A DNA stretch of 63,965 bases, filler included, from Octopus bimaculoides (GCF_001194135.2; 5 parts of 5 records of this genome joined end to end with filler, not necessarily neighbours in it); one strand, 5' to 3'. Positions 2,931-22,018 are shown, numbered from the whole stretch's first letter. Made by a program: numbers and translations. Notes: a model not told the origin generated them from the letters alone.

Positions 2931-3134
2931 GACTAAATCAGATCGAAACATTGTATCTAGCAGTCCACTTGTATTATAAACCAAGCATTATGCTTTTACT
3001 GAAAAGTCTTTTGTAGAATGTTTTCTAACACAAAATATTAAAGCTAGAGCCGCTCCATGCTTGTATGCCTATAAATGTTATACACACTGGTATTTTGATC
3101 TAAGGATTTCTCAGGTGTGTATATAAAAGCAGAA

Positions 3135-3559: not shown

Positions 3560-3609
3560 TCATATATTACAGCACAAAGAATTTTGATAGAAGCTTCCCG
3601 TGAAGATTT
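3560..3609 (-). CDS. Gene A probable terminal coding exon (EIFTGSFYQNSLCCNI*)
   Basis: Strong acceptor catctccgttgtctttccattttag, phase 1, TGA at 3562-3560. An internal donor T|gtaata at 3571 is an alternative. Confidence 0.5.
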
Positions 3610-6600
3610 CTAAAATGGAAAGACAACGGAGATGATACAATTGTTAGCGATAGAAAACAAAACTATACAATGTTGTGGAGGTCAGCTTTCCAGAATGTGC
3701 AAACCCTTCATTTGAATATTTAAGAAACAAGGGAGGACTGAGATTTGCAATACCTGTGTTTCATTACACAGGTGTGTGTGTTTCAATTGACCAGACCAAT
3801 ACTAAACCACTATTTTGTCCTTGTTACGTCTCAATCTACTGCTATCTCGCACCTTCGGATGATCTCTACTCAACCGCTACACAACTGCTACTCGACTGCT
3901 ACTCAACACACCTACCACGGCCAGACTACCTCTATTTATATGTCTTGGGAAATCCTACTTCTTCGCCTGGGGGCATCGACACAGCAGTCTTATAGATTTC
4001 AATTTTGATAATTTTGAGTTAAAGTTCAACTGCAAAGACTTCTCCATCCTCAGAAAGTTGTGGAATGCTTTGCCTTGGCTTAACAATAGTAAAGAAACTG
4101 AACTCGTGACGTCGTTCATCTAGATGTAAGTTAAACAGGACATAACTTTATGTAACATTAATACTCTACCGTTTGGGTTGACTGCTTCCATCTTTGGTAA
4201 ATTAGAACTCACAGGAACAAAAGTGCCATTTACTGGAAGATATAACATTTATATAAATATAGCATAAAATATGTTAGTTAACGGTTAGGTAAATATTTTC
4301 TTTGAACAATAAAGAGACAATCAATTCTATGTAATATTCTTGTTTCAGTTTGCTCTATAGTGATTTCAAGGTTTTAAAACCACGAGAGAATATATTTGTA
4401 CAACAAGCGTCGATTTAGTAGGAAGGTATACAAGCAAAGTTTTGGTTTCACTTAAGCTGAATATTTAAAAGTCCAAATATTTAGTTGTTGGTCTTATATA
4501 TTATGTTCAGGAATTATAATGCCAGTGTAATTCTACAATNNNNNNNNNNNNNNNNNNNNNNNNNNNNNNNNNNNNNNNNNNNNNNNNNNNNNNNNNNNNN
4601 NNNNNNNNNNNNNNNNNNNNNNNNNNNNNNNNNNNNNNNNNNNNNNNNNNNNNNNNNNNNNNNNNNNNNNNNNNNNNNNNNNNNNNNNNNNNNNNNNNNN
4701 NNNNNNNNNNNNNNNNNNNNNNNNNNNNNNNNNNNNNNNNNNNNNNNNNNNNNNNNNNNNNNNNNNNNNNNNNNNNNNNNNNNNNNNNTAAAGGATATAT
4801 TCTTAAGTTTTACTGAATGGTGACTTCGATAATGTTTCTAATGCACATGCGCTTATAGATAAATATTTATCTTTTAATGGATGAAATCAATAGATAACAC
4901 CCACCATTTGCCAGTAGATCGTTTGCTCCAGCCGGTAGCTGGAATCCGCCATTTGTTCTGTTTAACTGACCCGGACGTTCTAAGAGATTCTGTGACCAGG
5001 TAGGATTAGCTGGAAATGTACGGAGGAAGAAAAGTAGGGTTTTATTACGAATTATATCTAATTTAAGCTATTTAACATTATGTACATATTAATAAAAGCA
5101 AAAGAATATTTTATTAGAGTTATCAATCCGAAATTTACAGACAAACCTAAGCCCATAGATACAGAGATAGACAAAACACAAGTATAATCAAAATACAAAA
5201 TACAGAAACAAAGCAACAGACACAAAACACATTCCCGTGTCAGTTTAACAATAAGTTACAATTCTATCTTCGTAGATTATTAGGAAGAAAAAGGAAAACA
5301 GAATGGTAAAAGGAAATTAAGCGTTTAGAGATAATAATATGTGTATATGTGTATGTTGGAGACCAAAAGTTGATGACTTACATTCATAAACACAGCTTCC
5401 CAATCTTCTGTTCCAAACTGTCTGAGTTGGACATTCTAACACGTAGAGGACACCGTAGTTGCAATGGTAGAACTGTTTGTTGGATCCGAGTTTGGAATAG
5501 TAAGTGTACTTTCTACAGGGGCGACATTGTGGGTTTTTCACTCCGAATACACAGAACTGTGTGGCTTTAAAATGAAAGAAAATATTCGAGTGAATCATAT
5601 ATATATATTTGGCATCATTTCTAAAAATAGCCAAACACCTACTGCTGCTGTCCAAAGGAATAGGTATAAAAGACAAAAGAACAGCCAGTCTGCTACAGTA
5701 CATCTGTCAAACGGGACCTTGATGAATGCCATGAGGCAGGAAAGTATACTAATCCTTATATATTTAATACTCAATATTTCATATATTCAATAAGACATTC
5801 AATACTTCATTTCATTTTACTATTTACATTATATATTCCATATTCTATGTCCCACATTCATTTTATAAGAATATAAATAAAACATAAAAACCAGACAGAG
5901 TTGGAACTCTTTTAAATAATATATATATATATANNNNNNNNNNNNNNNNNNNNNNNNNNNNNNNNNNNNNNNNNNNNNNNNNNNNNNNNNNNNNNNNNNN
6001 NNNNNNNNNNNNNNNNNNNNNNNNNNNNNNNNNNNNNNNNNNNNNNNNNNNNNNNNNNNNNNNNNNNNNNNNNNNNNNNNNNNNNNNNNNNNNNNNNNNN
6101 NNNNNNNNNNNNNNNNNNNNNNNNNNNNNNNNNNNNNNNNNNNNNNNNNNNNNNNNNNNNNNNNNNNNNNNNNNNNNNNNNNNNNNNNNNNNNNNNNNNN
6201 NNNNNNNNNNNNNNNNNNNNNNNNNNNNNNNNNNNNNNNNNNNNNNNNNNNNNNNNNNNNNNNNNNNNNNNNNNNNNNNNNNNNNNNNNNNNNNNNNNNN
6301 NNNNNNNNNNNNNNNNNNNNNNNNNNNNNNNNNNNNNNNNNNNNNNNNNNNTCTCTCTCTCTCTCTCTCAACCTCTCTCTCAACCTCTCTTTATTCTCAT
6401 TACCTGTGTTACACTTAATATAACTTAATATAAACTACAACATAATAATAATAACAAACGTAATCTTACTATTAACATCGATCACTTCTTTATTTGTGAG
6501 AATTCCCAGAAGCGAAGGTATTAATGGGGTCACGGTAATAAATCCTGGAAAACATAAGGAAATTCATAAATAACAGCAGAAATATCAACAAAGTTGTGTA

Positions 6601-9600
6601 ATAAAAAAAAAATGAATTATTATTTATTTATAAATTTATGAGCCCTTTTAAAGCCTAGCCAGGCTCATGGGCCCGGTTTCCCGATTTCTGTGGCGTATGT
6701 GTTCCCCCCCACCCACCAGCTGGACGGGACGCCAGTCCATCGCAGCGTTACTCAAAAAACAGGAAGAAACATTGAGAGAAAGTTGGGACGAAAGAATACA
6801 ACAGGAGTCACCACTACCCCCTGCCGGAGCCTCGTGGAGCTTTAGATGTTTTCGCTCAATAAACACACACAACGCCAGGTAGGGGAATCGAAACCGCGAT
6901 CTTCTTTCTGACCGCGAGTCTGCTACCCCAACCACTGGGCCATTGCACCTCCACAATAAAAAAAAATCTAACATTACGTAAATCAACTAATCGATAGATA
7001 TATTAGTTTAAAATTATGACATTAGGCCAGCAGTTTCGAGGCAAGGAGTAAGTCGATTACACAGATACCAGTGTTAAACTGGTACTTAGTTTATCGACCC
7101 CAAATGGACGAAAAGCAAAGTCGACGGCGGTGGAATTTGAACTGACTCAGAACATACAGACGGACGAAATGCCGCAAAGCATTGGTGCCCGGCGTGTTAA
7201 CGGTTCTGCCAGCTCACCGCCCTTATAAATTGATATATCAATTAATAATTTTATTGACAAGGGGTTTTCGGGGGTTTTTTTTTTGTTTTTTTTTTGTTTC
7301 ACGGAGAACATATCTGGGAGGCTACCGAAAAGCAATTTATCCGACGCTCACCGTAATGCACAGTTTCGGATAACAATTAACAAGGTTTATTGTTATGTTT
7401 TACAATTCATTACGATAATGAAAGGAGAAACAACACGCCAGTAATTTAATGTTCAATCTCACTGCCAAAACAATGTGTTAAACATGTAAATGAAGACGTT
7501 AGGAATTGACGTTAAACCAAGAACGAGTAAATGAGAATCAATAATATATACTTAACCATTATTCTTTCCAGATGAAGGTTCAGTTGTTGTTCCTCTGCGA
7601 GTCAGATCTATTGACGGTTTCAAAGTCGACATTCTTCTATTCCCTGTACCATTTGTACCTTCACCAGTACCAACACTACCAGCAGTACCTTGTCCGCCAC
7701 CACTACCGCCACCGCCGCCACTGCCACCACCACCACTGCCACCAGCACCGCCGGCACCAGCACCGCCACTGGCACCGCCACCGGTTCCTTGCTTTCCACC
7801 TGCAACTCCTCCACCTGCAACTCCTCCACCTGCAACTCCTCCACCTGTAACACTTCCTGTACTCTGGCTACTGCCTGTGACTCGTCCGGTACCCTGGCTA
7901 CCGGCTGTACCACCTGTACCTTGACTGCCATCTGTAACACCTCCAGTACCCTGATTACCGCCTGTTTGGTCTCCTGTACCAAGGGTACCACCTGATACTC
8001 CTCCAGTAGACTGGCCACCACCTGTAACACCTCCTGTCCCTTGGCTACCACCAGATTCTCCTCCAGTACCCTGCCAAACTCCCGTACCGCCTCCTGTGTC
8101 TTGGCTACTGCTTGCAGCTCCCTCAGTACCCTGACTACTGCCTGTCTTACCTCCCGTTCCCTGGCTACCAGGTGTTCCTCCTCCAGAACCCTGGGTACCA
8201 CCTGTTCCTCCACCTATTACTTGTCCACCATTTGAGATCCCTCCAGTGCCTTGGCTACTACCTGTTCCACCTCCAGTACCCTGGCTACCAGCTATAACTC
8301 CTCCAGTAATGTGGCTACCACTTGTGCCCTCTCCTGTTACCTGCCTACCACCTCCGGTACCCTGTTTACTACTCGTTCCACTTCCTGTACCCTGGCTCCC
8401 GCCTGTAACTCCTCCAATACCCTGGACACCACCCGTTCCTCCTTCTGCAACACCTCCAGTACCCTGGCTGCTACCTGTTCCTCCTCCAGTCCCTTGGTTA
8501 CCACCTGTTCCTCCTCCAGTTCCCTGGTTACCACCCATTCCTCCTCCTGTAACCTGGTTAACACCTGTTCCTCCTCTTGTACTTTGGCTACCACTTACAA
8601 CACCCCCTGTACCCTGGCTGCTACCCGTTCCACCTCCTGTTCCCTGATTGCCACCTGTTCCTCCTACAGTAACCTGCTTACCACCTGTTCCTCCTACAGT
8701 AACCTGCTTACCACCTGTTCCTCCCCCTGTACCCTGGTTACCATTTGCAACACCTCCAGTTCCTTGGCTGCTACCTGTCCCCCCACCTGCACCCTGGTCA
8801 CCACCAGTTTTTCCTCCAGTACCCTGTTTACCACCTGTTCCTCCACCTCCTGTAACCTGGTTACCACCCGCAACTCCTCCAGTACCTTGGCTGCTGCCTG
8901 TTTCGTCTTCTGTTCCTTGGTTACCACTTGTTCCTCCTCCAGTACCCTGGTTTCCACCCGTACCTCCTCCTGTACCCTGGCTGCCACTTGCAACACCTCT
9001 AGTACCCTGGCTGCTACCTGTTCCACCTCTCATACCCTGGTTACCACCAGTTCCTCCTGTACCCTGGCTACTACTTGCTCCTCCTCTAATACCTTGACTA
9101 CCACCCGTTGCTTCGCTTGTACCCTGGCTACTACCTGTTCCAACTCCTGTACCATGGCTACCACCCGCAACGCCTTCAGTAACCTGGCTACCACCTGAAC
9201 CTCCTCCTGTACCCTGGTTTCCACTTGTTGCCCCTCCTGTTACTTGTTTACCACCTGTTGCACCTCCTGTACCCTTGCTACTACCTTTTCCTCCACCTAT
9301 ACCCCCGCTACTACTCGTATCGCCTCCTGTACCCTGGCCACCACCTGCAACTTCTACAGTACCCTGGTTACCACCTGTTCCTCCAGCAGTACCTTGGTTG
9401 CCACCTGCAACTTCTCCTGTACCCTGAGTTTCACCGATCCCTCCCCCTGTACCCTGGCTACCACCTATATCCCCTCCAGTACCTTGGCTACCTCCTGTTC
9501 CTCTTCCAGAACCCTGGCTACCACCTGTAATTACTCCATTACTCTGGTTACCACCCGTACCTCCTTCTGTACCCTTGCTATCTTCGGTAACTTCTTCTCT

Positions 9601-12600
9601 ACCCTTGTTAGCACCTGTAACTACTCCTGTATCCTGGCTACTACCTGTTCCCTTTCCAGTACCTTGGTTCCCACCTGTTGCTCCTTCTGTACCCTTGCTA
9701 ACACTTGTACCTCCTCCTGTATCTTGGCTACCACCTGTTTCGCCTCCTGTACCCTGGTTACCACCTGTAATTCCCCCTGTACCCTGGCTATCACCTGTTC
9801 CTCCTCTTGAACCTTGGATCCCGCCTGTAAATCCTCCTGTTCCCTGGTTACCACCCGTACCTGCACCTGCACCTTGGTTACCACTCGCACCTCCTCCTGT
9901 AACCTGGCCACTACCCGCACCGCTTCCTGTACCCTGGCCACCGCCTGCAACTCCTCTTGTACCTTGACTACCACCCGCACCACCTCCTGTAACTACTCCT
10001 GTACCCTGGCTACTACTTGTTCCTCCTCCAGTACCTGCGCTACCACCTGTACTCTGGCTACCTCCCGTACCTCTTCCTGTACTCTGGCTACCTCCCGTAC
10101 CTCCTCCTGTAACCTGGCTACCACCTTTCCTGCCTCCTGTACCCTGGCTACCGCTTGTAATTCCTCCTGTACCTTGATTATTACCTGTTCCTCCTCCTGT
10201 ATCCTGACTACCGCTTACTACTCCCCCTCCTCCAGTTATCTGACTTCCACCGGTACCTGCTCCTGTACCCTGGCTACCGCCTGTAACTCCTCCTGTGCCC
10301 CGGGTACCGCCGGCTCCTTCTCCTTCTGTTACCTGTTTACCACCTGTACCCGATCCTGTACCCTCGACTCTATTCGTACTACCTCTTGTACTCTGGCTAC
10401 TACCCGCACCTCCTACTGTACCCTGGCTGCTGCCTGTTCCACCTTGCCCCCCTGCTGTACCCTGGCTATCACCTGTAACTCCTCCTGTGTTCTCAGTAAC
10501 GCCTGCTCCTCCTCCTTCTCCTCTCGTTACCTGGCTACCACTTGTTCCCTCTCCTGTACCCTTGGTTCCACCCGTAACTCCTCCTCCTGTACCCTGGCTA
10601 CTACCTGCACCTCCTACTGTACCCTGGCTGCTACCTGTTCCGCCTTTCCCTCCTGCTGTACCCTGGCTACCACCCGCACCTCCTCCTGTAATCTGACTGC
10701 TGCCTGTTCCACCTGTTCCGCCTTTCCCTCCTGCTGTACCCTGGCTACCACCTGTAACTCCTCCTGTGCCCTGGTTACCGCTTGCACCTCCTCCTCCTCC
10801 TGTTCCCTGGCTACCGCCTGTACCCGCTCCTGTACCCTCGAATCCACCCGTACCTCCTCCTGTACCTTGGCTACCACCCGCACCTCCTCCTGTAATCTGA
10901 CTGCTGCCTGTTCCGCCTGTTCCGCCGGTTCCTCCTACAGTACCCTGGCTACCGCCTGAAATTCTCCCTGGAATTTGGCTGCCACCCTGGTTAGTACTTG
11001 TACCACCTCCAGTACCCTGGCTACCCCCTGTTCCTCCTGCAGTACCCTGGCTACCTCCTGTTCCTCCTGCAGTACCCTGGCTACCCCCTGTTCCTCCTGC
11101 AGTACCCTGACTACCCTCTGTTCTTCCTGCAGTACCCTGGCTACCCCCTGTTCCTCCTGCAGTACCCTGGCTACCCCCTGTTCCTCCTGCAGTACCCTGG
11201 CTACCCCCTGTTCCTCCTGCAGTACCCTGGCTACCCCCTGTTCCTCCTGCAGTACCCTGGCTACCCCCTGTTCCTCCTGCAGTACCTTGGCTACCCCCTG
11301 TTCCTCCTGCAGTGCCCTGGCTACTACCTGTAATTTGGCTACCACCAGTCCCTCCTCCTCTGTCCTGGTTAATAGCTGTATCTCCTCCAGTACCCTGGCT
11401 ACCACCAGTTATTGTTTTTCTACCATCACCTTCTTCGCTTGTTTGATTTTCAGGTTTAGCATTTATTCCACGTAATGCAGAAGCAAGTTCATCTGCAAAA
11501 TGGAAGATGAAAATTTAAACGACAATTTTGTACAAGTTTCCTTATATTCTTTTCTTGTATTGTTAACTGAAATTTTGATGACATGTTGATATTTAATCAT
11601 AACAACGACGAATGAACACATTGCTGTGAAATAAATAACTATCGTAATTTCTGGTAGAAAACATTCAAGACTATAATCATAGTATTTTAACAGTTCCACT
11701 CGTCAAACCAGATGATGATACGGAACTGAATTCCGCTAAAGGAACAGAAAACTTTGGTAGCATTAACCAGTAAACTAATTTAGTTTAAAAATCAGCAACT
11801 CAGAACACAAAAGGCACAAAAAATCTCGTTCAATTTTCAAACAATTTCACAAATCTGCCATCATTCACTGGCAATATATTTTTGTCGACTCAGGAAAAAA
11901 TGAAAAACAAAATTGTTTCAGTTGGATCTGAACTCAAGCTGCAGAACATATCACAAGGTATTTTGTCCTTGGCGACACTGTTACTTAACCACCTATATTT
12001 TTATGTTTACAGTGCCTAAACTTCCCAAGGGATCGCCCATCTAAATAGTAACTATGCTCAAAGTTGCTTAATTTTGATGGTCGAAAGTGAAGAGAAACAA
12101 CGCTTTTAACGTGACATAACCGTAAAGATTATTACAATTTTAAAAATTGCTTTCTCGTAAGAGCCTTCTATTGTTTATTGACAATTGGCCCTATTCTCTT
12201 CATGACATATATGGGAGAAAAGAAAGGTGCATTGACAAAATCTTATTTCGCCCAAATTCGCTATTCTGTTGCATAACAAATAGGACCTTTAGAGGATTAA
12301 GAATCATAGTTAAAATCGGAAAATGAACCCGAAAATAAGCTTTTATTAGCAGAAGGGTTTTTCAGTAATTTCTTTGTAGTTCAGGGACTTACCATAGATG
12401 CATTTAGTCGATTCACCGTCCCAAACTGTGTTTAAAGGACACTCCATGATGAACAACCATCCAGAGAGGCATTGGTAAAATTCGATCGTGGATTTCAGCT
12501 TCGGATAAAATGTTCCGGGAGCACATCGACGACATCTTGGCTGATTCACTCCAAAGATACAGAAATTGGTCCCTGAAATAGCAGAAAGAGTACGTGCTGA

Positions 12601-12657
12601 GAATATGCGTAGGTGAATATATATATATGTGTGTGTGCTTGTGAGTGAGTGTGAGTT

Positions 12658-12696
<39 letters not shown>

Positions 12697-14507
12697 NNNN
12701 NNNNNNNNNNNNNNNNNNNNNNNNNNNNNNNNNNNNNNNNNNNNNNNNNNNNNNNNNNNNNNNNNNNNNNNNNNNNNNNNNNNNNNNNNNNNNNNNNNNN
12801 NNNNNNNNNNNNNNNNNNNNNNNNNNNNNNNNNNNNNNNNNNNNNNNNNNNNNNNNNNNNNNNNNNNNNNNNNNNNNNNNNNNNNNNNNNNNNNNNNNNN
12901 NNNNNNNNNNNNNNNNNNNNNNNNNNNNNNNNNNNNNNNNNNNNNNNNNNNNNNNNNNNNNNNNNNNNNNNNNNNNNNNNNNNNNNNNNNNNNNNNNNNN
13001 NNNNNNNNNNNNNNNNNNNNNNNNNNNNNNNNNNNNNNNNNNNNNNNNNNNNNNNNNNNNNNNNNNNNNNNNNNNTATATATACATTATATATTTACATA
13101 TATATTCGCATATATATATGTGTGTGTGTGTGTGAGTGTGTGTGTGTGTGTGTGTGTGCGTCCATTTCTTTCACTCTCTACCACTTTTGCTCTCTACCTC
13201 TCTCTTTCTTTCTTAATCTTTCTCTCTCCTTCTCGCTTTCTCTCTCTCACTGACTATTCTTCTTTGTGATTGATTCCCCCGATGCGTTTCTCTTTCTTCT
13301 GATGAAAGACAAACGTCCGAAACGTTAACACTCATTTGTCTCATTAAAGCTTATAACTAATATAGTATTGGTAAGTCTTGTCTTGCCCACAATAGTACAA
13401 TAAACAAAACTAAAAAACTTACTTGTAGGCTCGATTGGCTCCCTTGAGTGCAATCCTTTTGATGGAGTGTATTCATCTCGAACCCCCGATGGTATGTTAG
13501 TGACATCTGGAACATGTTCTGGAAGGGCTGAAATATCTGGAATTCCTTCTGCTGTATTCCAAATACCGGGAACGCCTGAAAGTGGAAAATGAGAAATTAA
13601 AACAGCTTTTCGAGAAAAGACATTATCTTATAACCAACTCTTGATCTCAAATGTTAAGGGGTATCATTAAAAACAATCCATGAGTATTGATGCAGTTGAT
13701 GGCGGCGGCGGCGGTGGTGGTAGCGGTGGCGGCGGTGGTTGTGGTTTTATTATTACTTAACAGTAAAGTAGCGCAGTGGTGTTCACCAGTCATTTAATAT
13801 ATAGATTATTGGGTAATAGGAAACACACTCGTGGTGCTCGGATTATTGTCTTGGACTAATCCTATAGGAAGCCTCGAATTCAAATCCGTAAAGCAACAGA
13901 CTACTCCAGGATATACGGCGAATACCACATGGCATTCGTCACGTGCTATTTAGTACCATACATTTAAGCCTTGTGTTCAAATTCTACCTAGGCCATTTAT
14001 TTTTTTAAAATTGACTTGCCTTGATAAAATAAATTCCATATCAGGCCCTTGGATCGATTGATTCGACAGCACTTTTCTAAATCTTGCAGTTCTTGTGGTA
14101 CCAAAACCGAAACTCATTGATGTAGTACTCAGAAAATATTTCTGTGTGGTTAAAAAGTTTGCTTCCCAGCTATGTAGTTTGGGGTTCAGTTTCACTGTGC
14201 GTCATCTTGGACAAATGCCTTCTCACCCTGGGCCGCCCAAGGATTTGTCGGTAAATTTAATAGACAGAAATTAAGAGAAATCACTCGTATATATATATAT
14301 ATGTGTGTGTGTGTATATGTATGTATGTGTGTATGTATATGTATGTACGTATGTATGTATATATAATTTCATAACGTACCTGAAGAGCGCAGAGTTGCAT
14401 AGACGGACTGTTATGTAACACTCCGTTGAACGCCTAGTGCGAAACCGATTGGTAAGATCAGCCGTAATGGATGTATAATACTGTACACTTCAATTTATAT
14501 ATATGTA

Positions 14508-14547
<40 letters not shown>

Positions 14548-17500
14548 TTTACAAAATGGAACAAGAACGCAACAGACGACAATAAAACATCCGGACAGAG
14601 AGACGATACAAAGACGGACAGAAAAAAAACAAAAAAAAAATAGGCGGCCAGGAAAAACAAGGACGAGTCATTCGCACTCCTTTCTGATGAAGAGCGTAGG
14701 TTCGAAATGTAAAAGACCTTCTCACCTTCCCGAGCGTTAAACTAATACACGTGTTTGTTGTTTGTACACCTGTCTTCGTCTTTTGTTTTTCTGTAAATTT
14801 CAACTATATATATATATATATATATATACATACACACATACATACATATGTATTTAGACATATATGTGTGCGTGTGTGTGTATGCGTGCGAGTGCGTGTG
14901 TGCAGTAATGGGATCATTTAAATCAGATCAAGACGAATCAACAATGAGGCTCTTTTGTGGGTTTTGGCTAGCCATTTTATTCTGGATATTCCAGGTAATG
15001 TAATCATCCAGATTGTCGTCAATAAGGGGAAATGGGATCAAACTAGTATCAATTATCACTCAAATCAAAGTAAATATCAAAAAATAATAAAATCAAAAAA
15101 GAAGACAGCAAGGATGAAGAGAAAAAATATCTTATAACACTCACTGCCAGCTACGCATTCTTTTAACAGGCCGGCCCATACGGTTCCAATTGGACAAGAT
15201 CTCACAAATAACCATCCATGGACACATTGGTAGAATTGTCTTACGGATCCAGGTTTGCTGTAGTAAGTGTCTTGTAGACATGGTAGACAATCTGTGTCAT
15301 CGTTACCATAGAGACAAAGGGATGATGCTGGAGAAATAGAAGCGGAAACTTGGCGTTATACAGTTATAATCTTTGTGAATATAGAATGTCGTTGATGAAA
15401 CGGTGGTATGAATATCACCTAATCTCTTTCTTCGTGGCTTAAAATTTTAAAGGATGTGTTGAAAACACACAGCTGGTAATATAATACTATATTACATGCA
15501 TATGCAATCACATAAACACACACAGCATTTAAAGTGCGACTGCACTGATTACTTTGAAATGACATGGTTTCAAAGCCGGCTTCTTAACCACAGAGAAATG
15601 AGGGTGTCAAAACCTGTAATACACTTATAATGGATGTTTCGTTAGAGTTGAAATGTAACCAGTTACATATGAATGAAGAAAACAATTAAGAGATTCTCAC
15701 CTCCGTAAACGCATGCTGATAACGTGCTATTCCATATTGTTCCCGAGGGACAATACATGAGGTAGAGCCAACCATTTTTGCAATGATAGAAGTGAGAAAG
15801 AGATGCTGATTTGCTGTGATAACTGTCATTTTCGCATGGTTTACATTTAGGATTATAGACGCCAAAAACACACATCGTCTCTGAAATCAAAATAAGATAT
15901 TTATTATTACTGAATAATAATCCTTTATACTACTGGCACAAGACCAGAAATTTTGGGGCAGGGAATAGTCGATTACATCGACCTCAGTACTAGATAACAG
16001 GCAATATTAGATGTTATATTTTGGAAACCCCGTCACTTTAATAAGAAACGAAGACCAACTCAACTTCATCTATTTTATTGGCAGGTTCATAACATGAAAC
16101 TAAGCATCTAATGGAGAATAAGAATAAGAGATCTCTCGCAGCCTTGTGGGACTCACCTCCGTTACGGTGCCTTGAAGAAGAAGAAGAAGAAGAAGAAGAA
16201 GAAGAAGAAGAAGAAGAAGAAGAAGAAGAAGAAGAAGAAGAAGAAGACAAGGACACACTTTTGACTGTAATTTATATGAAATAGATACAGTGTACTCCTT
16301 TACTTGTTTCAGTGATGGATTGCGAGCATACTGGAGTGCCACCTTGAAGGGCTTAGCCGAACTAAAGTCAAGGCTGAGTCCACTGAATTGCGATCAAAGG
16401 CTTTCTATTTATGACCATCCAATCCTTTTGCTCACGGCCTAATATATTTAGAACTACGGAATCCTTTCTTCTTTTCTCATCTTTTAAGACAGTTGTGTGT
16501 GATATAGGAAAAAGATGAAAATATTTTGCCGCTGTTTTTAGCAGATCGGTGGTAGGACCACATAGTGGGTTCCCCGTTGGCACGTCAACCCCACCTTCAC
16601 ACTTTTCAACAACTAAAGTGAAACAGAATAAAAGTATAATCTTTTCTACTATAGACACAAGGTCCGAAATTTTGGGAAGGGGGCTAGTCGATTAGACCGC
16701 CCCAGTACACAACTGGTACTTAATTTATCAACTCCGAAAGGATGAAAAGCAGAGTCGACCTCAATGGAATTTGAACTCAGGACGTAACGACAGACGAAAT
16801 AAGAATGAAAGTAAAATATAAGCATTAAGGTTTGATGGTTACCAGAAGCACTTTGAACTTGCTGTGTCGGTTGAACATCCAGACTGTCCCTACGTATATT
16901 CAGCTTGTTCTTCCATCGTGACAGAACTAGAAATAAAAAAGCACGTTTTTTTTTTTTAATGTAAAGCATGGAAAAAAAGGAAATATGAAATGTGTATATT
17001 TGTGTTTCGTGGCTTTTCTTAATTGATATCTCCTTATGTTATATCACACTCCTTTGACAGATTCATACTGAGGATGACCTCCATTGCTTCATTCATATAT
17101 TCCTATGGGTATACTAACATAAATCATAACGAAAACTTTATACACTACAAACGCACTATATTCTAGTTTTGAGGAGGAGGAGTAAGAAGGTGGTGGTGGT
17201 GATGGTGAAGGGAGGGAATAGATGATGAAAGAAAAAAGAAAGAAGCAAAGAAANNNNNNNNNNNNNNNNNNNNNNNNNNNNNNNNNNNNNNNNNNNNNNN
17301 NNNNNNNNNNNNNNNNNNNNNNNNNNNNNNNNNNNNNNNNNNNNNNNNNNNNNNNNNNNNNNNNNNNNNNNNNNNNNNNNNNNNNNNNNNNNNNNNNNNN
17401 NNNNNNNNNNNNNNNNNNNNNNNNNNNNNNNNNNNNNNNNNNNNNNNNNNNNNNNNNNNGAACAAGAGAAAGAAAGGAGGAAAAAAGAAAGAAGAAGAAG

Positions 17501-17605
17501 AAGAAGAAGAAGAAGAAGAAGAAGAAGAAGAAGAATGAATGAATGAATGAAGAAAAAGAAGAAGAAGAAGAAGAAGAAGAAGAAGAAGAAGAAGAAGAAG
17601 AAGAA

Positions 17606-17652
<47 letters not shown>

Positions 17653-20600
17653 AGAAGAAGAGTTGTTTTATAATCGAAATTGCTTACAGTCGAAGATGCA
17701 CGTCCTTGTATGTTGGTACCAAATGGTTCCAGATTGACAATATCTTGGCAGTAGTACACCATAAACACATTTGTAATATCTGGTTTGGTCGTTCGGATGC
17801 GAGTAAAATCCACCGGTTACACACGGTTGACATTCCGTCATTAGATTTTCTTTGGAACACAATTTTGACACTGGAAAGTATTAGAAAATATTGGCATCAA
17901 ATTTTAGCACAAGGCCAGTAATTTTGGGGGCAGGAAAAAGTTGTTTACATCGACCCCTAGTGTTCAACTGGTACTTATTTTATCGATTTTGGAAGGGTGA
18001 AATAATGCAAAGTAAAGACGGACGAAATGCAGCTATACATTTTGTTCGGCGTGCTAACGATTCTGCTAGCTTGCCGCCTTAATACTGGAATCAAATTTTG
18101 GCACGAGGCCAGTAATTTCGGGAGTTGGGGCTAAATTGATAAGATCGACTCTAATGCTCAGCTGATACTTATTTTATCGACCCCGAAAGGCAAAGTCGAT
18201 CTCAGCAGCATTTGAACTCAGAACGTAAAGGCAGACGAAATACTGCTAAGCATTTCGCCCGGCGTGCTAACGTTTCTGANNNNNNNNNNNNNNNNNNNNN
18301 NNNNNNNNNNNNNNNNNNNNNNNNNNNNNNNNNNNNNNNNNNNNNNNNNNNNNNNNNNNNNNNNNNNNNNNNNNNNNNNNNNNNNNNNNNNNNNNNNNNN
18401 NNNNNNNNNNNNNNNNNNNNNNNNNNNNNNNNNNNNNNNNNNNNNNNNNNNNNNNNNNNNNNNNNNNNNNNNNNNNNNNNNNNNNNNNNNNNNNNNNNNN
18501 NNNNNNNNNNNNNNNNNNNNNNNNNNNNNNNNNNNNNNNNNNNNNNNNNNNNNNNNNNNNNNNNNNNNNNNNNNNNNNNNNNNNNNNNNNNNNNNNNNNN
18601 NNNNNNNNNAAAGCAAAGTTGACTTCGGTGGAATTTGAACCCAGAACGTAAAGTCGAACGTAATACTACTTGTCGCCGTAATATTAGGAAATATTTTTTC
18701 TACTCTAAGCACAAGGCCCGAAAATTTGGGGGAGGGGGCTAGTCGATTATATCGACCTCAGTACTCAACTGGTACTTAATTTATCGACCACGAAAGGATG
18801 AAAGGCAAAGTCGACCTCGGCGGATTTTGAACTCAGAACGTAAAGGCAGACGAAATACTGCTAAGCATTTCGCCCGGCGTGCTAACGTTTCTGATAGCTC
18901 ACCACCTTTTTTTTAGACTTAATATTGTCCATGCTACATCACCTGACTTGTATTTTATTTTATGTTCATTTTTTTTTAAATTCAATTTTAATTTAATTAT
19001 TCCTTCATTTATTTATTTATCTATTTATTTATCTATTATTGTTTTTAAGCGACAAGGCTACCAGTCAAGTATTGTGATTCATGGTATAGTCTAACCTTCT
19101 CCCTCTAAAATTGTTGACCCAGTGTCAAAATTTGAAGCAATTATTATCATTGCCTCTTGGACGGCAAGGCTGGCAGAATCGTTAAAGCGTTGGACAAAAT
19201 TCCTTTGCGATAGTTCTTCAGACTCTTTACATTCCGAGATCAAATTCCGAGTAAGTCAGCTTTGCCATTCATTCTCTCGGAGTCCATAAGACAAATACCA
19301 GTCGAGCACTGGGGTCGCGCGGTATTCAACCAATTTTCTTCCATTAAAACTGTGACAAAATTTTAAAAGGTTTTCAAATCCTGTCGCGGACAACTTTGCC
19401 TTTAATGCTTTCGGGATCGATAAAATAAGCACCTGTTGAGCACTGAGAGTCAATATAATTGATTGGCTATCTTACCCCAAATTTTGAGACCTCGCGCCTG
19501 TAGTAGAAATAATTATAATTAACATTGCTTTTAGGCTGCAAGGGTTGTAGAATAGTTAGAGGATCGGATGAAATGCCACGTAGGATTTCTTCGGGGGCGT
19601 TTTACGTTCTTAGTTCAAATTACACTGTGATCAGCTCTACCTTTCATACCTCCGGGGTCGATAAAGTAATTTATCAGTCATGTACTGTTTTCGATATCAA
19701 CTGAGACCTACCCCAACACAAAATTCCGTCTTTGTTCCTAAATCATAGTCTAGTTTTTTGTCTTTTTTTTTCTTTTAACATAATAATAATGTTAACTCAC
19801 CGTTTACTGTCGACCGTAGCATTTCATGGATAGAAACTAAAACAAAGAGAAGAGGAACAAGATAAGTAGATTGAGTGAGAGTGTAGTTCTAGAGTATGGA
19901 GTGAAACAACGAGTGAAGTGAAAGATTGAGTGGTGTATTATTTGATGTTTAAAAAAATCATATAATATTTTTATAATTAAATATTATCAGGAATTGCTTT
20001 AAAAAATTGTTAAAATATTTTGTATATTATAGAAGTATAAGCAATTTATTGCAGATAAATTTTAACTCCAAAATCTTATATAGACTCCCAAGTGGCCAAA
20101 TGGACCCACATTAACAACTACTGCTCTAGGCTAATATAAACTTAACAGTACATTGGGATCGTGTTAGTTCATGATTGTTTTCACTGCTAATATCTTGATA
20201 TTAAGTAGACAGTATTTACTAAAACTTATGGAGAACAGATTTCTAGTGTGTCTCTACCAATGACAACAATACAACTGAGGGATCTTCTATTCGGATACGG
20301 AAGTCTCCAAAATATAACATACGATATGACTTGGTGTTCGGTACGATATCAGAGGCCATCAAAGCCTACTCTGCATCGAGCAATAATAGTAACTATAACA
20401 TATTTAGACGTAAAGATGCTACTAAATATTTCGGTTTTAGATGGCGTACCGAACTTGTTCAGGCTGCCCTTCCTTGAACTATGTCAACAAAAATAATTTT
20501 GACTCATCACACCGAGCTAAGAATCAATCAACATGCGGCAATTTTACTGTGCTCTACCCGGTTTAACATTGTTCAGGATTTTTTTTATATATCTAGATCA

Positions 20601-22018
20601 ATCAAGAGTATTGGCTGTTTGAAAGTTAAAACACTTAATCAAGGTCCGTTGCTACACAACACCCAAAGGAGTTTTTGGAACGCCAATTTTTCGGTTTGTA
20701 TGCAGTGGTAAACATTCATAACAAACCCACTCTTTAAATCCAAGTAACTGTTTCAAAAATATTCTTCTAAATATAAGTTTAAAGTGGAGGAGGCTGGAGA
20801 GAAGAAAGAGAAGCTTTCTAATATTAGGTTCGTCTAACAATAGTATATTGGTGTATAGGTGTTGAGTGCAAAGAGTTAGAGATTTCTAGTCTTACCCAAT
20901 CTGCATGCTGTGTTATTCGAACGAAACTTCTCACAAATTATATGACACCTTTGATAAATTTCGCTGTTGGCCGGTTGTCTGAAAATGAAAACATATATCA
21001 TGCCATCCATTACACTAATTACATACATACACACAACACACGCGCACGTGCACGCATATATTTTTTTTTCCGCACGAGTGTAAGTATAAAGAAAATCAGT
21101 TGAAAATGCCCTTGGTGTCTTTAAGAAAATTCATATTCATTTATTTAAGTGGTTTCACAATTTATTGATTTTCGTAAGTAGTGGAAGATGGAAAGTTCTG
21201 CAGCTATGCGCTATTTGTTACAACTCTAAGGAAAATGTCAAAATTCTTTTCTTTTTATGACTAGATTATGGCTCTACTTGCAGTCATCTAAGATACGGTT
21301 TGATTGGTTGAAGATGATCACGAGGCTAGGCATAGAATTCGCTTAGTTCTCTGTCCTCAGTTTTGGGACGACGTAACTGTATGAATGTAATTTCACCAAA
21401 AGATAAGGCTATGTTAATCCACTGAATGTATCATGTGATACTATGAATAACAATTGAGAGTTATGATCTTGCATTAGATCATGTGACGATGTGGAAGACT
21501 TTGGTGCTAAAATCACTAAAATTGCAATTTTTTCCATTTTATCTTTGTTCTGAAAAAAAAACACCGATCAAATACAGAGAGAGATATGATGAAAGAGAAA
21601 TGTTTATTTAACGATACAATTAATGTTTGAATACGCTATAACAACGTACAAAACATACATTCACTCACAACTAAATTACCAAGACCTCACATGATTTTAG
21701 TTCTCAAACACACGCACACAATAACACAGTCAATCTCATATATATATATATATAGATACATATAACTATGTAATATTTTGGACTAATGGGTATGTATCGA
21801 TTAGTGTGTTGAAGTGGCACGGTTTGAACTACCTGGTGTCATCCGCAGTTTGGGTATATTTCCTTCTCTCCCGGTGATTTCATTGCATGCCCAGACACAT
21901 ACCAATGGTATTTAAGCATCGCCACTCTCAGATTTATTGTTTTCACATACGCTAGTTTACCCGAAACTGCGACCCTGGCAGATGCTACAACTCCTGGTTA
22001 GAGCTAAACTGCAGTAAA
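3560..22018 (-). CDS. Gene model A: multi-exon protein with 5 CBM14/peritrophin-A-like domains and a ~1,270-aa Gly-rich repeat; first (ATG) exon not identified
   Basis: join(22018-21961, 20978-20896, 19836-19801, 17870-17688, 16926-16843, 15880-15701, 15327-15145, 13575-13423, 12572-12393, 11492-7557, 5564-5382, 5009-4905, 4232-4170, 3609-3560). All junctions are GT-AG and phase-compatible, total 5,477 nt, with no internal stop on manual translation. The core exons (17870 to 4905) are strong; the terminal small exons are weaker. Confidence 0.8.
4170..4232 (-). CDS. Gene A exon (VNGTFVPVSSNLPKMEAVNPN)
   Basis: Acceptor atatcttccag, donor G|gtagag, 63 bp, phase 1-1, open. Confidence 0.55.
4905..5009 (-). 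CDS. Gene A exon (SNPTWSQNLLERPGQLNRTNGGFQLPAGANDLLAN); absent from ORF track
   Basis: Acceptor cttttcttcctccgtacatttccag, donor G|gtgggt, 105 bp, phase 1-1, open. Confidence 0.8.
5382..5564 (-). CDS. Gene A exon: chitin-binding module 5 (ATQFCVFGVKNPQCRPCRKYTYYSKLGSNKQFYHCNYGVLYVLECPTQTVWNRRLGSCVYE)
   Basis: Acceptor ttttctttcattttaaag, donor T|gtaagt, 183 bp, phase 1-1; Cys spacing x8,x2,x17,x9,x12. Confidence 0.92.
7020..7223 (-). mobile_element. tRNA-derived SINE family A (representative copy)
   Basis: Minus strand ggcggtgagctggcagaaccgttaac...gagttcaaattccaccgccgtcgac. About 20 related copies, e.g. ~16655-16800, 17905-18082, 18098-18279, 18710-18905, 22975-23137, 32987-33280, 46075-46305, 47480-47679, 47845-48050, 49220-49435, 49570-49781, 53535-53915, 58261-58481. 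Confidence 0.85.
7557..11492 (-). CDS. Gene A giant exon: 1,312 codons of Gly/Thr/Ser/Gln-rich decapeptide repeats (consensus ~GGTGGSQGTG)
   Basis: Acceptor ttttcatcttccattttgcag|AT (DELASALRGINAKPENQ...). A codon-by-codon check found no stop from 11490 to 9034, and the ORF track shows the frame open from 9033 to 7552. The track starts at 9033 only because no ATG/GTG/TTG occurs earlier. Donor G|gttaag is weak but phase 1. Confidence 0.88.
11011..11310 (-). repeat. Ten near-identical 30-bp coding repeats (AGGTGGSQGT)
   Basis: Plus-strand unit agtaccctggctaccccctgttcctcctgc in tandem with only scattered single substitutions. Confidence 0.95.
12005..12127 (-). pseudogene. Decayed full-length 5S rRNA copy
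   Basis: Minus strand ctttacggttatgtcacgttaaaagcg...aaattaagcaac...gttactatttagatgggcgatcccttgggaagtttaggcactgtaaac follows the metazoan 5S sequence along its length with many transitions, and is followed by an A-rich tract. Confidence 0.75.
12393..12572 (-). CDS. Gene A exon: chitin-binding module 4 (RTNFCIFGVNQPRCRRCAPGTFYPKLKSTIEFYQCLSGWLFIMECPLNTVWDGESTKCIY)
   Basis: Acceptor ctttctgctatttcag, donor G|gtaagt, 180 bp, phase 1-1. Confidence 0.92.
13423..13575 (-). CDS. Gene A exon: Pro/acidic linker (SVPGIWNTAEGIPDISALPEHVPDVTNIPSGVRDEYTPSKGLHSREPIEPT); absent from ORF track
   Basis: Acceptor tttctcattttccactttcag, donor A|gtaagt, 153 bp, phase 1-1, open. Confidence 0.88.
14376..14458 (+). 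ncRNA. Type I hammerhead-like motif, core intact, stem I disrupted
   Basis: CTGAAGA 14380-14386; stem II GCGC/GTGC with an inner ACGGA/TCCGT hairpin; GAAA 14441-14444; stem III ACC-GATT-GGT; cleavage triplet GTA. The first two stem I pairs mismatch. Confidence 0.55.
14680..14715 (+). ncRNA. Minimal (Penelope-type) hammerhead motif
   Basis: Stem I CTTT/AAAG; CTGATGA plus an inserted A; stem II GAGC-GTAG-GTTC; GAAA-TGT-A. A family member with a mutated core (CTGTTGA) lies at 45645-45680. Confidence 0.65.
15145..15327 (-). CDS. Gene A exon: chitin-binding module 3 (ASSLCLYGNDDTDCLPCLQDTYYSKPGSVRQFYQCVHGWLFVRSCPIGTVWAGLLKECVAG); absent from ORF track
   Basis: Acceptor cttctatttctccag, donor A|gtgagt, 183 bp, phase 1-1, same 6-Cys spacing as the other modules. 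Confidence 0.92.
15701..15880 (-). CDS. Gene A exon: chitin-binding module 2 (ETMCVFGVYNPKCKPCENDSYHSKSASLSHFYHCKNGWLYLMYCPSGTIWNSTLSACVYG)
   Basis: Acceptor cttattttgatttcag, donor G|gtgaga, 180 bp, phase 1-1. Confidence 0.92.
16843..16926 (-). CDS. Gene A exon: linker (FLSRWKNKLNIRRDSLDVQPTQQVQSAS)
   Basis: Acceptor ttttttatttctag, donor G|gtaacc, 84 bp, phase 1-1. It is required: joining 17688 directly to 15880 would create a TAG stop. Confidence 0.85.
17495..17660. repeat. (GAA)n microsatellite (representative of many TA, CA, TATC, GA, GAA and AAT tracts)
   Basis: Direct reading; similar tracts flank most N gaps. Confidence 0.95.
17688..17870 (-). CDS. Gene A exon: chitin-binding module 1 (VSKLCSKENLMTECQPCVTGGFYSHPNDQTRYYKCVYGVLLPRYCQSGTIWYQHTRTCIFD)
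   Basis: Acceptor ttttctaatactttccag, donor T|gtaagc, 183 bp, phase 1-1; G-F-Y-S-H-P...Y-Y-K-C motif typical of CBM14. Confidence 0.92.
19801..19836 (-). CDS. Gene A small exon (VSIHEMLRSTVN)
   Basis: Long polypyrimidine acceptor cttgttcctcttctctttgttttag, donor G|gtgagt, 36 bp, phase 1-1. Confidence 0.6.
20896..20978 (-). CDS. Gene A exon (QPANSEIYQRCHIICEKFRSNNTACRL)
   Basis: Acceptor gttttcattttcag, donor G|gtaaga; open only as phase 2 in, phase 1 out. Confidence 0.6.
21961..22018 (-). CDS. Gene A candidate near-N-terminal exon (VYCSLALTRSCSICQGRSFG), possibly the end of a signal peptide
   Basis: Acceptor ttttgaatgttggccag, donor GG|gtaaac in phase 2, matching the next exon. Nearer acceptors at 22008 and 21993 are possible. 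Confidence 0.5.

What the first reader, a model, noticed from the sequence alone, without database searches (positions are those of the whole stretch)
3560..22018. Unannotated-looking ~1,830-aa chitin-bridging protein: four CBM14-like modules, ~1,270-aa Gly-rich chain, fifth module
Seen: 14 phase-compatible exons, several invisible to the ORF track, and a 3.9-kb repeat exon that the track truncates to 493 aa. Known: CBM14/peritrophin-A modules bind chitin in peritrophins, invertebrate intestinal mucins and molluscan matrix proteins, where spacers are usually Thr/Pro-rich. Inference: chitin-binding ends on both sides of a long flexible Gly/Thr/Gln chain suit cross-linking of chitin fibrils in a compliant cephalopod structure (gut or oesophageal cuticle, sucker lining, beak or radula). 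I do not recognise this architecture, but novelty is untested.
Basis: partly seen in the sequence, partly recalled or inferred. Interest (0 to 1): 0.85.

Follow-up and report, generated by a model that had tools for sequence, protein, structure and literature searches.

The report
Giant octopus chitin-binding glycine-rich protein
The window holds most of one real, transcribed octopus gene for a very large secreted protein: two clusters of chitin-binding-type modules joined by a floppy glycine-rich chain of about 1,250 residues; related species annotate it only as "uncharacterized", and nobody has studied what it does.

Summary
RNA contigs from four runs confirm 13 minus-strand exons (20978 to 4170). 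All have AG/GT borders and together give one 1,814-codon open frame. All five assembly gaps lie in introns, and the RNA crosses them with no exon missing. Five single-exon modules each pass Pfam CBM_14 (29.6-37.7 bits, cut-off 22.1). One module models at pLDDT 95 and matches only CBM14 folds. The 3,936-nt exon encodes about 125 copies of the decapeptide GTGGGTGGSQ and is transcribed colinearly.

Three corrections:
- The gene runs off both ends of the window.
- The full protein, judged from the 95%-identical Octopus sinensis LOC118763360, is a signal peptide, 4 modules, the Gly chain, then 7 modules (about 2,450 aa), not 4+1.

The modules share a fixed non-canonical cysteine framework, C-x8-C-x2-C-x17-C-x9-C-x12-C. 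The gene is annotated but uncharacterised in O. sinensis and Argonauta hians. Comparable uncharacterised designs exist in an abalone and a butterfly.

Best reading: a secreted, multivalent chitin-fibril cross-linker with a disordered, hydrated spacer. Chitin binding and the tissue are untested. I rate it a new variant of a known kind, of moderate interest.

The parts
20896..20978 (-). Exon A (83 nt), N-terminal Cys-containing region. Upstream exon(s) with the start codon and signal peptide lie outside the window.
   Evidence: RNA joint 19836/20896 with CT..AC on +. The loose end beyond 20978 is absent from the window and translates to SEQPKSTETT, which matches the orthologue's SEQPKSNETT.
19801..19836 (-). 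Exon B (36 nt)
   Evidence: Contig pieces and joints. The loose end after 17871 maps to 19802-19831.
17688..17870 (-). Exon C (183 nt): CBM14-like module 1
   Evidence: RNA contig piece 17688-17871. Pfam CBM_14 33.4 bits.
16843..16926 (-). Exon D (84 nt): linker
   Evidence: RNA contig piece. Record numbering runs on to exons C and E.
15701..15880 (-). Exon E (180 nt): module 2
   Evidence: Joint 15327/15701 seen in 4 runs. Pfam 37.7 bits. AlphaFold2 model pLDDT 95.4; its best PDB matches are all CBM14 folds.
15145..15327 (-). Exon F (183 nt): module 3
   Evidence: Pfam 32.5 bits.
13423..13575 (-). Exon G (153 nt): Pro/Glu/Ser-containing linker
   Evidence: Loose ends from exon F and from exon H. 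Contig record positions 390-542 leave exactly 153 nt.
12393..12572 (-). Exon H (180 nt): module 4
   Evidence: Joint 11492/12393 seen in 4 runs. Pfam 32.2 bits.
7557..11492 (-). Exon I (3,936 nt): short lead-in, then about 125 decapeptide repeats (consensus GTGGGTGGSQ; 1,255-aa core with Gly 44.5%, Thr 15.9%, Ser 10.9%, Gln 8.5%, Pro 0.2%, no Tyr or Cys), then a short non-repeat tail.
   Evidence: Stop-free frame. Period 30/60/90 nt. Autocorrelation peak at lag 10. Colinear RNA contigs tile the exon with no internal joints. In-frame length variants between runs. AlphaFold2 on 300 aa gives pLDDT 35 and no secondary structure.
6470..6544 (-). Exon I2 (75 nt): linker
   Evidence: Loose end before 7556 equals the start of this exon. 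Loose end behind 5564 maps to 6470-6499.
5382..5564 (-). Exon J (183 nt): module 5
   Evidence: Joint 5009/5382 seen in 4 runs. Pfam 29.6 bits.
4905..5009 (-). Exon K (105 nt): linker
   Evidence: Joints 4232/4905 and 5009/5382.
4170..4232 (-). Exon L (63 nt): linker and last exon inside the window. The transcript goes on for 1,993 nt that are not in the window.
   Evidence: The loose end reads in frame as ETTLCISEMD, matching the orthologue's ETTLCISEID, the start of module 6.

Best explanation
The window contains the internal 13 exons of an Octopus gene orthologous to O. sinensis LOC118763360.

Full protein (about 2,450 aa, inferred from the orthologue plus the RNA contig lengths): a signal peptide, a short Cys-containing head, four CBM14-type modules, a roughly 1,255-residue intrinsically disordered chain of about 125 Gly/Thr/Ser/Gln decapeptides, then seven more CBM14-type modules. 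Each module is one symmetrical phase-1 exon.

Most likely mechanism (inferred): the protein is secreted into a chitin-containing extracellular matrix. Its two multivalent module clusters bind chitin fibrils with high avidity. The long, Pro-free, uncharged, hydrophilic Gly-rich chain between them acts as a flexible, hydrated tether. Fibrils or fibril layers are thereby cross-linked while the material stays compliant.

Shown here: gene structure, transcription, CBM14 profile and fold membership, repeat anatomy, conservation across octopods, and expression restricted to some samples.

Inferred: secretion (seen only in the orthologue's N-terminus), chitin binding, cross-linking, elasticity or hydration, and the tissue.
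For: - Transcript and frame.
- CBM_14 above the gathering score in all five modules and in all 11 modules of the orthologue (224.3 bits, 11 stretches).
- Module 2 models at pLDDT 95.4. Its 11 best PDB matches are all CBM14 folds: Der p 23, CHIT1 ChBD, EHEP, Avr4, tachycitin, Blo t 12, Der f 23. For the top ten, probability is 1.00 and for nine of them rmsd is 1.1-2.5 A over 42-49 columns; the eleventh, Der f 23, is at 0.95 over 30 columns.
- The profile also hits CHIT1 and nematode chitinase ChBDs at E about 1e-6. In that alignment Cys13/Cys34 and Cys44/Cys57 fall on CHIT1 Cys420-Cys440 and Cys450-Cys463, the two disulfides described as common to CBM14 folds (PMC4844120).
- Aromatic positions are kept: F/Y21, Y32 (invariant), W50 (invariant), and Y/F59 in 4 of 5 modules at the place of CHIT1 Trp465.
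- The orthologue has an N-terminal signal-peptide-like sequence, MPFSQTGTKTIFGWSALILLCFLSQTAHA. The window transcript's upstream loose end matches the residues that follow it.
- The Gly chain is kept in position and composition while its repeat unit has changed. Argonauta hians has at least 588 aa with an 11-residue period (recurring unit GTGGSGGSGNV), Gly 45%. Flanking modules are 69% identical.
- In-frame indels only.
- The transcript is present in 4 of 15 indexed RNA runs of the species, as expected of a tissue-specific matrix protein.
- Octopus has chitinous soft linings, for example the periodically shed sucker cuticle (PMC3672162).
Against: - No binding assay exists. The CBM14 fold does not guarantee chitin binding: EHEP and Der p 23 are reported not to bind chitin (PMC10619976).
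- The modules lack canonical Cys2 and Cys6 and carry a new N-terminal Cys pair.
- The conserved Trp of CHIT1 is Tyr or Phe here, and Ala in module 3.
- The tissue of the expressing runs is hidden, so co-location with chitin is not shown.
- The signal peptide and six of the seven downstream modules are inferred from an orthologue, not read in this genome.
- Disorder of the chain rests on composition and a single-sequence AlphaFold run, which is weak evidence.
Confidence: 0.6

Rival explanations
1. The modules have the CBM14 fold but bind something other than chitin (polyphenols, glycans, other proteins). The protein would then be a component of a chitin-free secretion such as mucus, saliva, egg coat or adhesive, with the Gly-rich chain as a gel-forming or spacer element.
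For: - The mollusc protein EHEP (three peritrophin-A domains) binds phlorotannin and not chitin, and Der p 23 also lacks chitin binding. Both are among the closest structural matches.
- The Cys framework is non-canonical.
- Small membrane-anchored proteins with the same framework and a mucin-like stalk exist (P0045, P0061), which suggests uses other than building matrix.
Against: - The best sequence matches among solved structures are true chitin-binding ChBDs of chitinases.
- Aromatic positions implicated in CHIT1 binding are conserved.
- Eleven tandem modules suit avidity for a polymeric, crystalline ligand.
Confidence: 0.22
2. It is a gut-lining 'invertebrate intestinal mucin' analogue. The Thr/Ser-rich chain is densely O-glycosylated and forms a lubricating, protease-resistant gel anchored to the chitinous oesophageal or stomach cuticle. 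Its job would be barrier and lubrication rather than mechanical cross-linking.
For: - Thr plus Ser make up 27% of the chain.
- CBM14 modules flanking a glycosylated low-complexity region is the classical design of peritrophins and intestinal mucins (established knowledge; AeIMUC1 is mentioned).
- The abalone protein P0073 combines CBM14 modules, a T/S/P mucin region and a Gly/Ser repeat.
Against: - Pro is 0.2% and Gly 44.5%, unlike Pro/Thr/Ser mucin domains.
- No glycosylation data and no tissue data.
Confidence: 0.15
3. The long repeat exon, or the joining of the two halves, is an assembly or annotation artefact (an expanded or collapsed repeat, or two genes fused).
For: - The assembly has many gaps.
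- The O. sinensis isoform X50 has only 159 aa of Gly chain. At least 50 predicted isoforms point to trouble modelling the repeat.
Against: - Independent RNA contigs from four runs of two studies and one further run of undetermined kind (X9; it also covers intron 7450-7556, so probably DNA) are colinear with the exon and show no internal joints. Word share is 0.87-0.90.
- Contigs link exon H into the exon's 5' end and its 3' end into exons I2, J, K and L.
- Variants are in frame.
- Argonauta also has at least 588 aa of chain upstream of the same modules.
Confidence: 0.03

Closest known systems
Octopus sinensis LOC118763360 (XP_036358737.1, isoform X50) and Argonauta hians GAB1598772.1
   Same: Orthologues. 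The module order matches. Non-repeat parts are 95.4% and 92.9% identical to O. sinensis and 69% identical to Argonauta. They share the 54-residue Cys framework and have a Gly-rich chain in the same position.
   Different: The listed O. sinensis isoform has only 159 aa of chain, probably a modelled internal deletion. Argonauta's repeat has an 11-residue period and is Ser-rich. Both are named only 'uncharacterized' or 'hypothetical'.
Insect peritrophins and invertebrate intestinal mucins (multi-CBM14 proteins with mucin linkers)
   Same: Secreted, with many CBM14 modules in clusters separated by a long low-complexity region. Presumed multivalent binding of chitin fibrils.
   Different: - The spacer is Gly-rich and Pro-free, not Pro/Thr/Ser.
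- The module Cys register lacks canonical C2 and C6 and adds an N-terminal C-x8-C-x2-C.
- The host is a mollusc and the tissue is unknown.
Human chitotriosidase ChBD and nematode chitinase C-terminal CBM14 (PDB 5hbf, 6so0, 6g9c)
   Same: Closest solved sequences (E about 1e-6) and folds. They also lack the canonical C2 and keep the two core disulfides. Aromatic positions align.
   Different: Those are single modules attached to a GH18 catalytic domain. Here there is no enzyme domain, 11 modules are present, and Tyr/Phe replaces Trp465.
Resilin (insect)
   Same: A chitin-binding element combined with long Gly-rich, disordered repeat domains, giving an elastic link to chitin (PMC9999432).
   Different: - Resilin uses a Rebers-Riddiford domain flanked by elastic repeats, the inverse topology.
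- Resilin's repeats contain Pro and Tyr and are cross-linked through dityrosine. The octopus chain has no Tyr and 0.2% Pro.
Abductin (scallop hinge elastomer)
   Same: A molluscan Gly-rich, Pro-poor decapeptide repeat (GGFGGMGGGX) in random coil (PMC9999432).
   Different: Abductin is 116 aa, hydrophobic (Met/Phe), and has no chitin-binding modules. The octopus chain is about 10 times longer, and its non-Gly positions are mostly polar and uncharged.
Squid beak chitin-binding proteins (DgCBPs)
   Same: Cephalopod secreted proteins thought to form the chitin-protein scaffold of a hard part. DgCBP-3 (PDB 7bwe) gives a weak profile match (E 0.11).
   Different: The match is not significant. DgCBP-3's domain is described as carrying an RR-2 consensus, with no comparable Gly chain. 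No decapodiform orthologue was seen among the 150 best hits listed by the profile search.
Haliotis rufescens LOC124137847 (P0073) and Parnassius mnemosyne CAK1580890.1 (P0069)
   Same: Uncharacterised giant proteins that combine many CBM14 modules with long Gly-rich repeats. The abalone protein has module clusters on both sides of about 440 aa of Gly/Ser/Glu repeat.
   Different: They have the canonical CBM14 Cys register. Their repeats are acidic (abalone) or (GGGGS)n between every module (butterfly). They are not orthologous.

Membership tests
CBM14 / peritrophin-A domain (Pfam PF01607) | Profile score above Pfam's gathering threshold | tested here: met
   All five window modules score 29.6-37.7 bits against a cut-off of 22.1. 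The orthologue has 11 stretches, 224.3 bits.
CBM14 / peritrophin-A domain (Pfam PF01607) | Distorted beta-sandwich fold of tachycitin, CHIT1 ChBD and Avr4 | tested here: met
   AlphaFold2 model of module 2: pLDDT 95.4. All 11 top Foldseek PDB matches are CBM14 folds. The top ten have probability 1.00; nine of them have rmsd 1.1-2.5 A; Der f 23 is at 0.95.
CBM14 / peritrophin-A domain (Pfam PF01607) | Two core disulfides (canonical C1-C3 and C4-C5) present | tested here: met
   Invariant Cys13/Cys34 and Cys44/Cys57 align with CHIT1 Cys420-Cys440 and Cys450-Cys463. The pairing itself is inferred from the alignment, not observed.
CBM14 / peritrophin-A domain (Pfam PF01607) | Canonical six-Cys peritrophin-A register (e.g. 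CX15CX5CX9CX12CX5-9C, disulfides 1-3, 2-6, 4-5) | tested here: not met
   Every module is C-x8-C-x2-C-x17-C-x9-C-x12-C. Canonical C2 and C6 are absent. The Pfam match ends at profile position 46-48 of 53. There is an extra N-terminal Cys pair. It is therefore a variant subtype, as is CHIT1's ChBD in its own way.
CBM14 / peritrophin-A domain (Pfam PF01607) | Binds chitin | not testable with these tools
   This needs a pull-down or ITC with recombinant modules. Some CBM14-fold proteins do not bind chitin.
Peritrophic-matrix protein / invertebrate intestinal mucin | Pro/Thr/Ser-rich O-glycosylated mucin domain between CBM14 modules | tested here: not met
   The chain is Gly 44.5%, Thr 15.9%, Ser 10.9%, Pro 0.2%. 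Glycosylation is unknown.
Peritrophic-matrix protein / invertebrate intestinal mucin | Expressed by gut epithelium and found in a gut chitin matrix | not testable with these tools
   Run identities are coded. The only result is that 4 of 15 indexed RNA runs hold the transcript.
Resilin-type chitin-anchored elastomer | Rebers-Riddiford chitin-binding domain and Tyr-containing repeats cross-linked by dityrosine | tested here: not met
   No family other than CBM_14 reached E <= 0.01 in Pfam on the four full-length relatives scanned; on the window's own pieces only CBM_14 passed its cut-off. The chain has no Tyr. Only the functional analogy (a Gly-rich disordered chain tied to chitin binders) remains.
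Orthologue group of O. sinensis LOC118763360 | Same module order, high identity in the non-repeat parts, Gly chain between modules 4 and 5 | tested here: met
   370/388 and 158/170 identical residues. Loose ends at both window edges continue into the orthologue's sequence.

The most novel reading that the evidence does not exclude
An octopod-specific entropic-spring tether. The roughly 1,255-residue Pro-free, Tyr-free, uncharged Gly/Thr/Ser/Gln decapeptide chain would be a previously undescribed kind of hydrated protein elastomer, held at both ends by multivalent variant-CBM14 clusters. It would give a soft chitinous lining its stretch and recoil; a candidate is the sucker cuticle that octopods have where decapods use suckerin ring teeth. 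It would be a molluscan functional counterpart of resilin, built from unrelated parts.
Probability: 0.15. Interest if true: 0.7.

Novelty: new variant of a known kind. Interest (0 to 1): 0.42.

Why it matters
Cephalopod structural proteins such as suckerins, beak proteins and reflectins have been productive models for biomaterials, but they come mostly from squid. The proteins that organise chitin in octopus soft linings are essentially unknown.

This gene offers a concrete, highly expressed, octopod-conserved candidate. It has a rigid 54-residue CBM14 subtype and an unusually long, simple and fast-evolving Gly-rich repeat. Its mechanics, hydration and possible glycosylation or cross-linking can all be tested directly.

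It is also a clean case for genome annotation. A 3.9-kb repeat exon and many small phase-1 exons are easily missed or over-split; the sister species carries an isoform numbered X50 for this gene.

Tried and rejected
- The search for homologous proteins gave nothing, both with the non-repeat parts and with the module profile. A 95%-identical protein is in that collection, so these nulls carry no information and I did not use them as evidence of absence.
I worked in shorter pieces instead.
- Pfam finds nothing in the Gly-rich exon.
It has a good acceptor and the right phase, but RNA depth at 3566-3648 is 0 and exon L splices elsewhere.
- An exon near 22018 is rejected: depth is 0 and the upstream loose end is absent from the window.
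- Collagen-like or GXY periodicity is rejected: the period is 10, not 3.
- Plus-strand ORFs inside the repeat (PPVPWLPP...) are rejected as antisense by-products. All splice joints read CT..AC on the plus strand.
- Literature searches found no paper on this protein: LOC118763360, octopus plus peritrophin/CBM14/chitin-binding, and the sucker cuticle transcriptome. The Argonaut egg-case proteome paper describes Pif-like ChtBD2/LamG3 proteins, not this one.
- The tissue of the expressing runs could not be learned because run identities are coded.
Full report
**1. What is in the sequence**

The long stop-free frames of the finding all lie on the minus strand. The largest, 7555-11514, is 1,320 codons without a stop. 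Five short frames translate to Cys-rich modules of about 60 residues. Each passes the Pfam CBM_14 gathering score of 22.1 bits, with 33.4, 37.7, 32.5, 32.2 and 29.6 bits.

**2. Transcript evidence and the assembly gaps**

Four RNA runs of the same species hold 72-90% of the sampled words of 7400-11600. Eleven other indexed RNA runs of that species hold 0-2%.

I laid the contigs of the positive runs on the window in pieces. Together with exact look-ups of the loose ends, this gives 13 exons:

| Exon | Coordinates | Content |
|---|---|---|
| A | 20896-20978 | N-terminal Cys-containing region |
| B | 19801-19836 | |
| C | 17688-17870 | module 1 |
| D | 16843-16926 | linker |
| E | 15701-15880 | module 2 |
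| F | 15145-15327 | module 3 |
| G | 13423-13575 | linker |
| H | 12393-12572 | module 4 |
| I | 7557-11492 | Gly-rich repeat |
| I2 | 6470-6544 | linker |
| J | 5382-5564 | module 5 |
| K | 4905-5009 | linker |
| L | 4170-4232 | linker |

All have AG/GT borders. Every listed joint of this transcript's contigs reads CT..AC on the plus strand. The concatenation is one 1,814-codon frame with no stop. From exon B on, every exon length is a multiple of three, so these are phase-1 introns and each module is one symmetrical exon.

The five N gaps flagged by the scan's program all fall in introns: K/L, I2/J, G/H, C/D and B/C. In each case the RNA contig passes from one exon to the next with continuous record numbering or a loose end that matches the neighbour. 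For G/H, the contig leaves exactly 153 nt, which is the length of exon G. No exon is hidden in a gap and the frame is preserved.

One 1,714-nt contig runs from outside the window through A-H into the first 209 nt of exon I. A 3,528-nt contig runs from the last 1,110 nt of exon I through I2, J, K and L and out of the window.

Exon I itself is tiled by colinear contigs with no internal joints. Contigs break only at the most perfect repeats. Between individuals I saw only in-frame length variants: 15 nt left out at 7795 and 3 nt left out at 10323.

**3.

Exon L does not splice to the proposed last exon at about 3560-3610. RNA depth there is zero, and the contig continues for 1,993 nt whose first 30 nt are not in the window.

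Upstream, the contig continues 423 nt beyond exon A into sequence that is also not in the window.

So the window holds an internal part of a larger gene.

**4. Relatives and the full architecture**

A profile of the five modules (alignment A1) was searched against 1.84 billion representative proteins. Two hits stood far above the rest.

- **P0001.** It is 1,350 aa with 11 full-length module matches (880 bits). It is XP_036358737.1, 'uncharacterized protein LOC118763360 isoform X50' of Octopus sinensis.
  - It is 95.4% identical to the window protein over the 388 non-repeat N-terminal residues and 92.9% identical over the 170 residues after the chain.
  - It starts with a signal-peptide-like sequence.
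  - The window transcript's upstream loose end translates to SEQPKSTETT, against SEQPKSNETT in P0001. The downstream loose end reads ETTLCISEMD, against ETTLCISEID.
- **P0002.** It is 1,315 aa with 7 matches (476 bits). It is a partial hypothetical protein of Argonauta hians.

The complete protein is therefore: signal peptide, short head, 4 modules, Gly chain, 7 modules. That is about 51 + 1,814 + 582, or roughly 2,450 aa. Six of the modules lie beyond the window's start.

The O. sinensis isoform carries only 159 aa of chain. Those residues correspond to the first and last repeats of the window's array, so this is most likely a modelled internal deletion. The X50 label suggests the annotation pipeline struggled with the repeat.

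Argonauta has at least 588 aa of chain with a different unit (11-residue period, recurring GTGGSGGSGNV, Gly 45%, Ser 22%). It sits upstream of the same seven modules, which are 69% identical in the I2-L region. The chain's position and composition are thus conserved while its sequence turns over. This pattern is typical of a functional low-complexity domain evolving in concert.

**5. The modules**

All 5 window modules, all 11 O. sinensis modules and all 7 Argonauta modules share one fixed 54-residue framework: C-x8-C-x2-C-x17-C-x9-C-x12-C.

- Relative to the canonical peritrophin-A register, canonical Cys2 and Cys6 are missing and two cysteines are added at the N-terminus.
- In the alignment to human chitotriosidase, framework Cys 2/4 and 5/6 fall on the two disulfides described as common to CBM14 folds. 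By elimination the new pair is Cys 1/3; this is an inference.
- AlphaFold2 on module 2, using the other four modules as the alignment, gives pLDDT 95.4.
- The 11 best PDB matches are all CBM14 folds.
- Aromatic positions that are exposed in CHIT1's ChBD are kept. These include the invariant Tyr32 and Trp50, and a Tyr or Phe in 4 of 5 modules at the position of the binding-critical Trp465.

Among the 150 best hits, the framework occurs otherwise only in two small proteins of unknown organism, P0045 and P0061. Each has a signal peptide, 2-3 modules, a Ser/Thr stalk, a transmembrane segment and a CCCSS tail.

**6. The chain**

- The 1,255-residue core is Gly 44.5%, Thr 15.9%, Ser 10.9%, Gln 8.5%, Val 4.6% and Ala 4.5%. 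Pro is 0.2%, and there is no Tyr or Cys.
- Splitting the chain at Gln gives 76 units of exactly 10 residues.
- Identity at lag 10 is 0.52, against about 0.2 elsewhere.
- TRF finds periods of 30, 60 and 90 nt.
- A 300-residue stretch predicts as unstructured, with pLDDT 35 (single sequence, so weak evidence).
- It is not collagen-like, because there is no period of 3.
- It is not a classical mucin domain, because there is no Pro.
- Its nearest compositional analogue is abductin's Pro-poor Gly-rich decapeptide. Its nearest functional analogue is resilin's pairing of a chitin binder with Gly-rich elastic repeats. It differs from both in sequence, polarity, length and available cross-link chemistry.

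**7. Most likely function**

The protein is most likely a secreted, multivalent chitin-fibril binder whose two module clusters are joined by a long, hydrated, flexible tether. In other words, it would cross-link and organise a compliant chitinous matrix. I put confidence at about 0.6.

The steps that rest on inference are secretion, chitin binding, cross-linking and the tissue.

The main rival is that these variant modules bind another ligand, as in the mollusc protein EHEP, which has the fold but not the activity. A gut 'mucin' reading and an artefact reading are less likely, for the reasons given under the rival explanations.

Expression in only 4 of 15 indexed runs fits a tissue-specific matrix protein, but the tissue is hidden. 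The periodically shed chitinous sucker lining, the gut cuticle, the beak or radula and the stylets are all candidates. No literature was consulted on which of these structures Argonauta has, so its orthologue does not rank them.

**8. Novelty**

- The gene is annotated, without a function, in two other octopods.
- No paper in the held library mentions it (and others).
- Multi-CBM14 proteins with low-complexity spacers are a well-known kind.
- Giant uncharacterised CBM14 proteins with Gly-rich repeats also exist in an abalone and a butterfly.
- What is new here is the fixed non-canonical Cys framework, which I saw only in octopod proteins and two small proteins of unknown source, and the exceptionally long Pro-free decapeptide chain placed between a 4-module and a 7-module cluster.

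I class it as a new variant of a known kind, with an interest of about 0.4.

Noticed in passing
window 12004-12127 (-): A full-length 5S rRNA-like element (Rfam RF00001, 48.1 bits against gathering 38, model positions 1-120) sits inside the intron between exons H and I. Low-depth RNA contigs overlap it: X2 at 11999-12254 and X3 at 12057-12217. It is probably a 5S pseudogene or a 5S-derived SINE.
   Followed up: no
window 15916-15991, 16635-16806, 17887-18066, 18081-18279, 18610-18894; also 3179-3323 / 6757-6901: Several copies of interspersed SINE-like repeats lie in the introns. One family occurs as an 81%-complementary inverted pair. Short RNA contigs pile up on them at word depths of thousands to tens of thousands, so the families are abundantly transcribed genome-wide.
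   Followed up: partly
window 17746 (exon C): RNA contigs of X1-X3 read C where the genome has T on the plus strand. On the transcript this is A>G, a synonymous Pro change (CCA to CCG). It is either a SNP or A-to-I editing; this could not be resolved.
   Followed up: partly
window 7795 and 10323 (exon I): There are in-frame length variants between runs: 15 nt (one GGVAG unit) left out in X1 and 3 nt left out in X3. The repeat number is polymorphic.
   Followed up: partly
window 2794-2937: A perfect 16-nt tandem repeat, CATCGAGGATACTTGT, occurs about 10 times in the intron downstream of exon L.
   Followed up: no
P0045 (329 aa) and P0061 (232 aa), from the profile search: These are small proteins with a signal peptide, 2-3 modules of the same 54-residue Cys framework, a Ser/Thr-rich stalk, a transmembrane segment and a CCCSS tail. 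This is a membrane-anchored relative of the module family. The source organisms are unknown (JGI and Logan contigs).
   Followed up: partly
P0073 (Haliotis rufescens LOC124137847) and P0069 (Parnassius mnemosyne CAK1580890.1): Other giant, uncharacterised multi-CBM14 proteins carry long Gly-rich repeats: about 440 aa of GSSGESGSTGGGSGE in the abalone, and (GGGGS)n between about 20 modules in the butterfly. This suggests recurrent evolution of the design.
   Followed up: partly
tool behaviour: the search for homologous proteins returned no hit although a 95%-identical protein is in its collection. Its nulls should not be read as absence of relatives for this window.
   Followed up: yes
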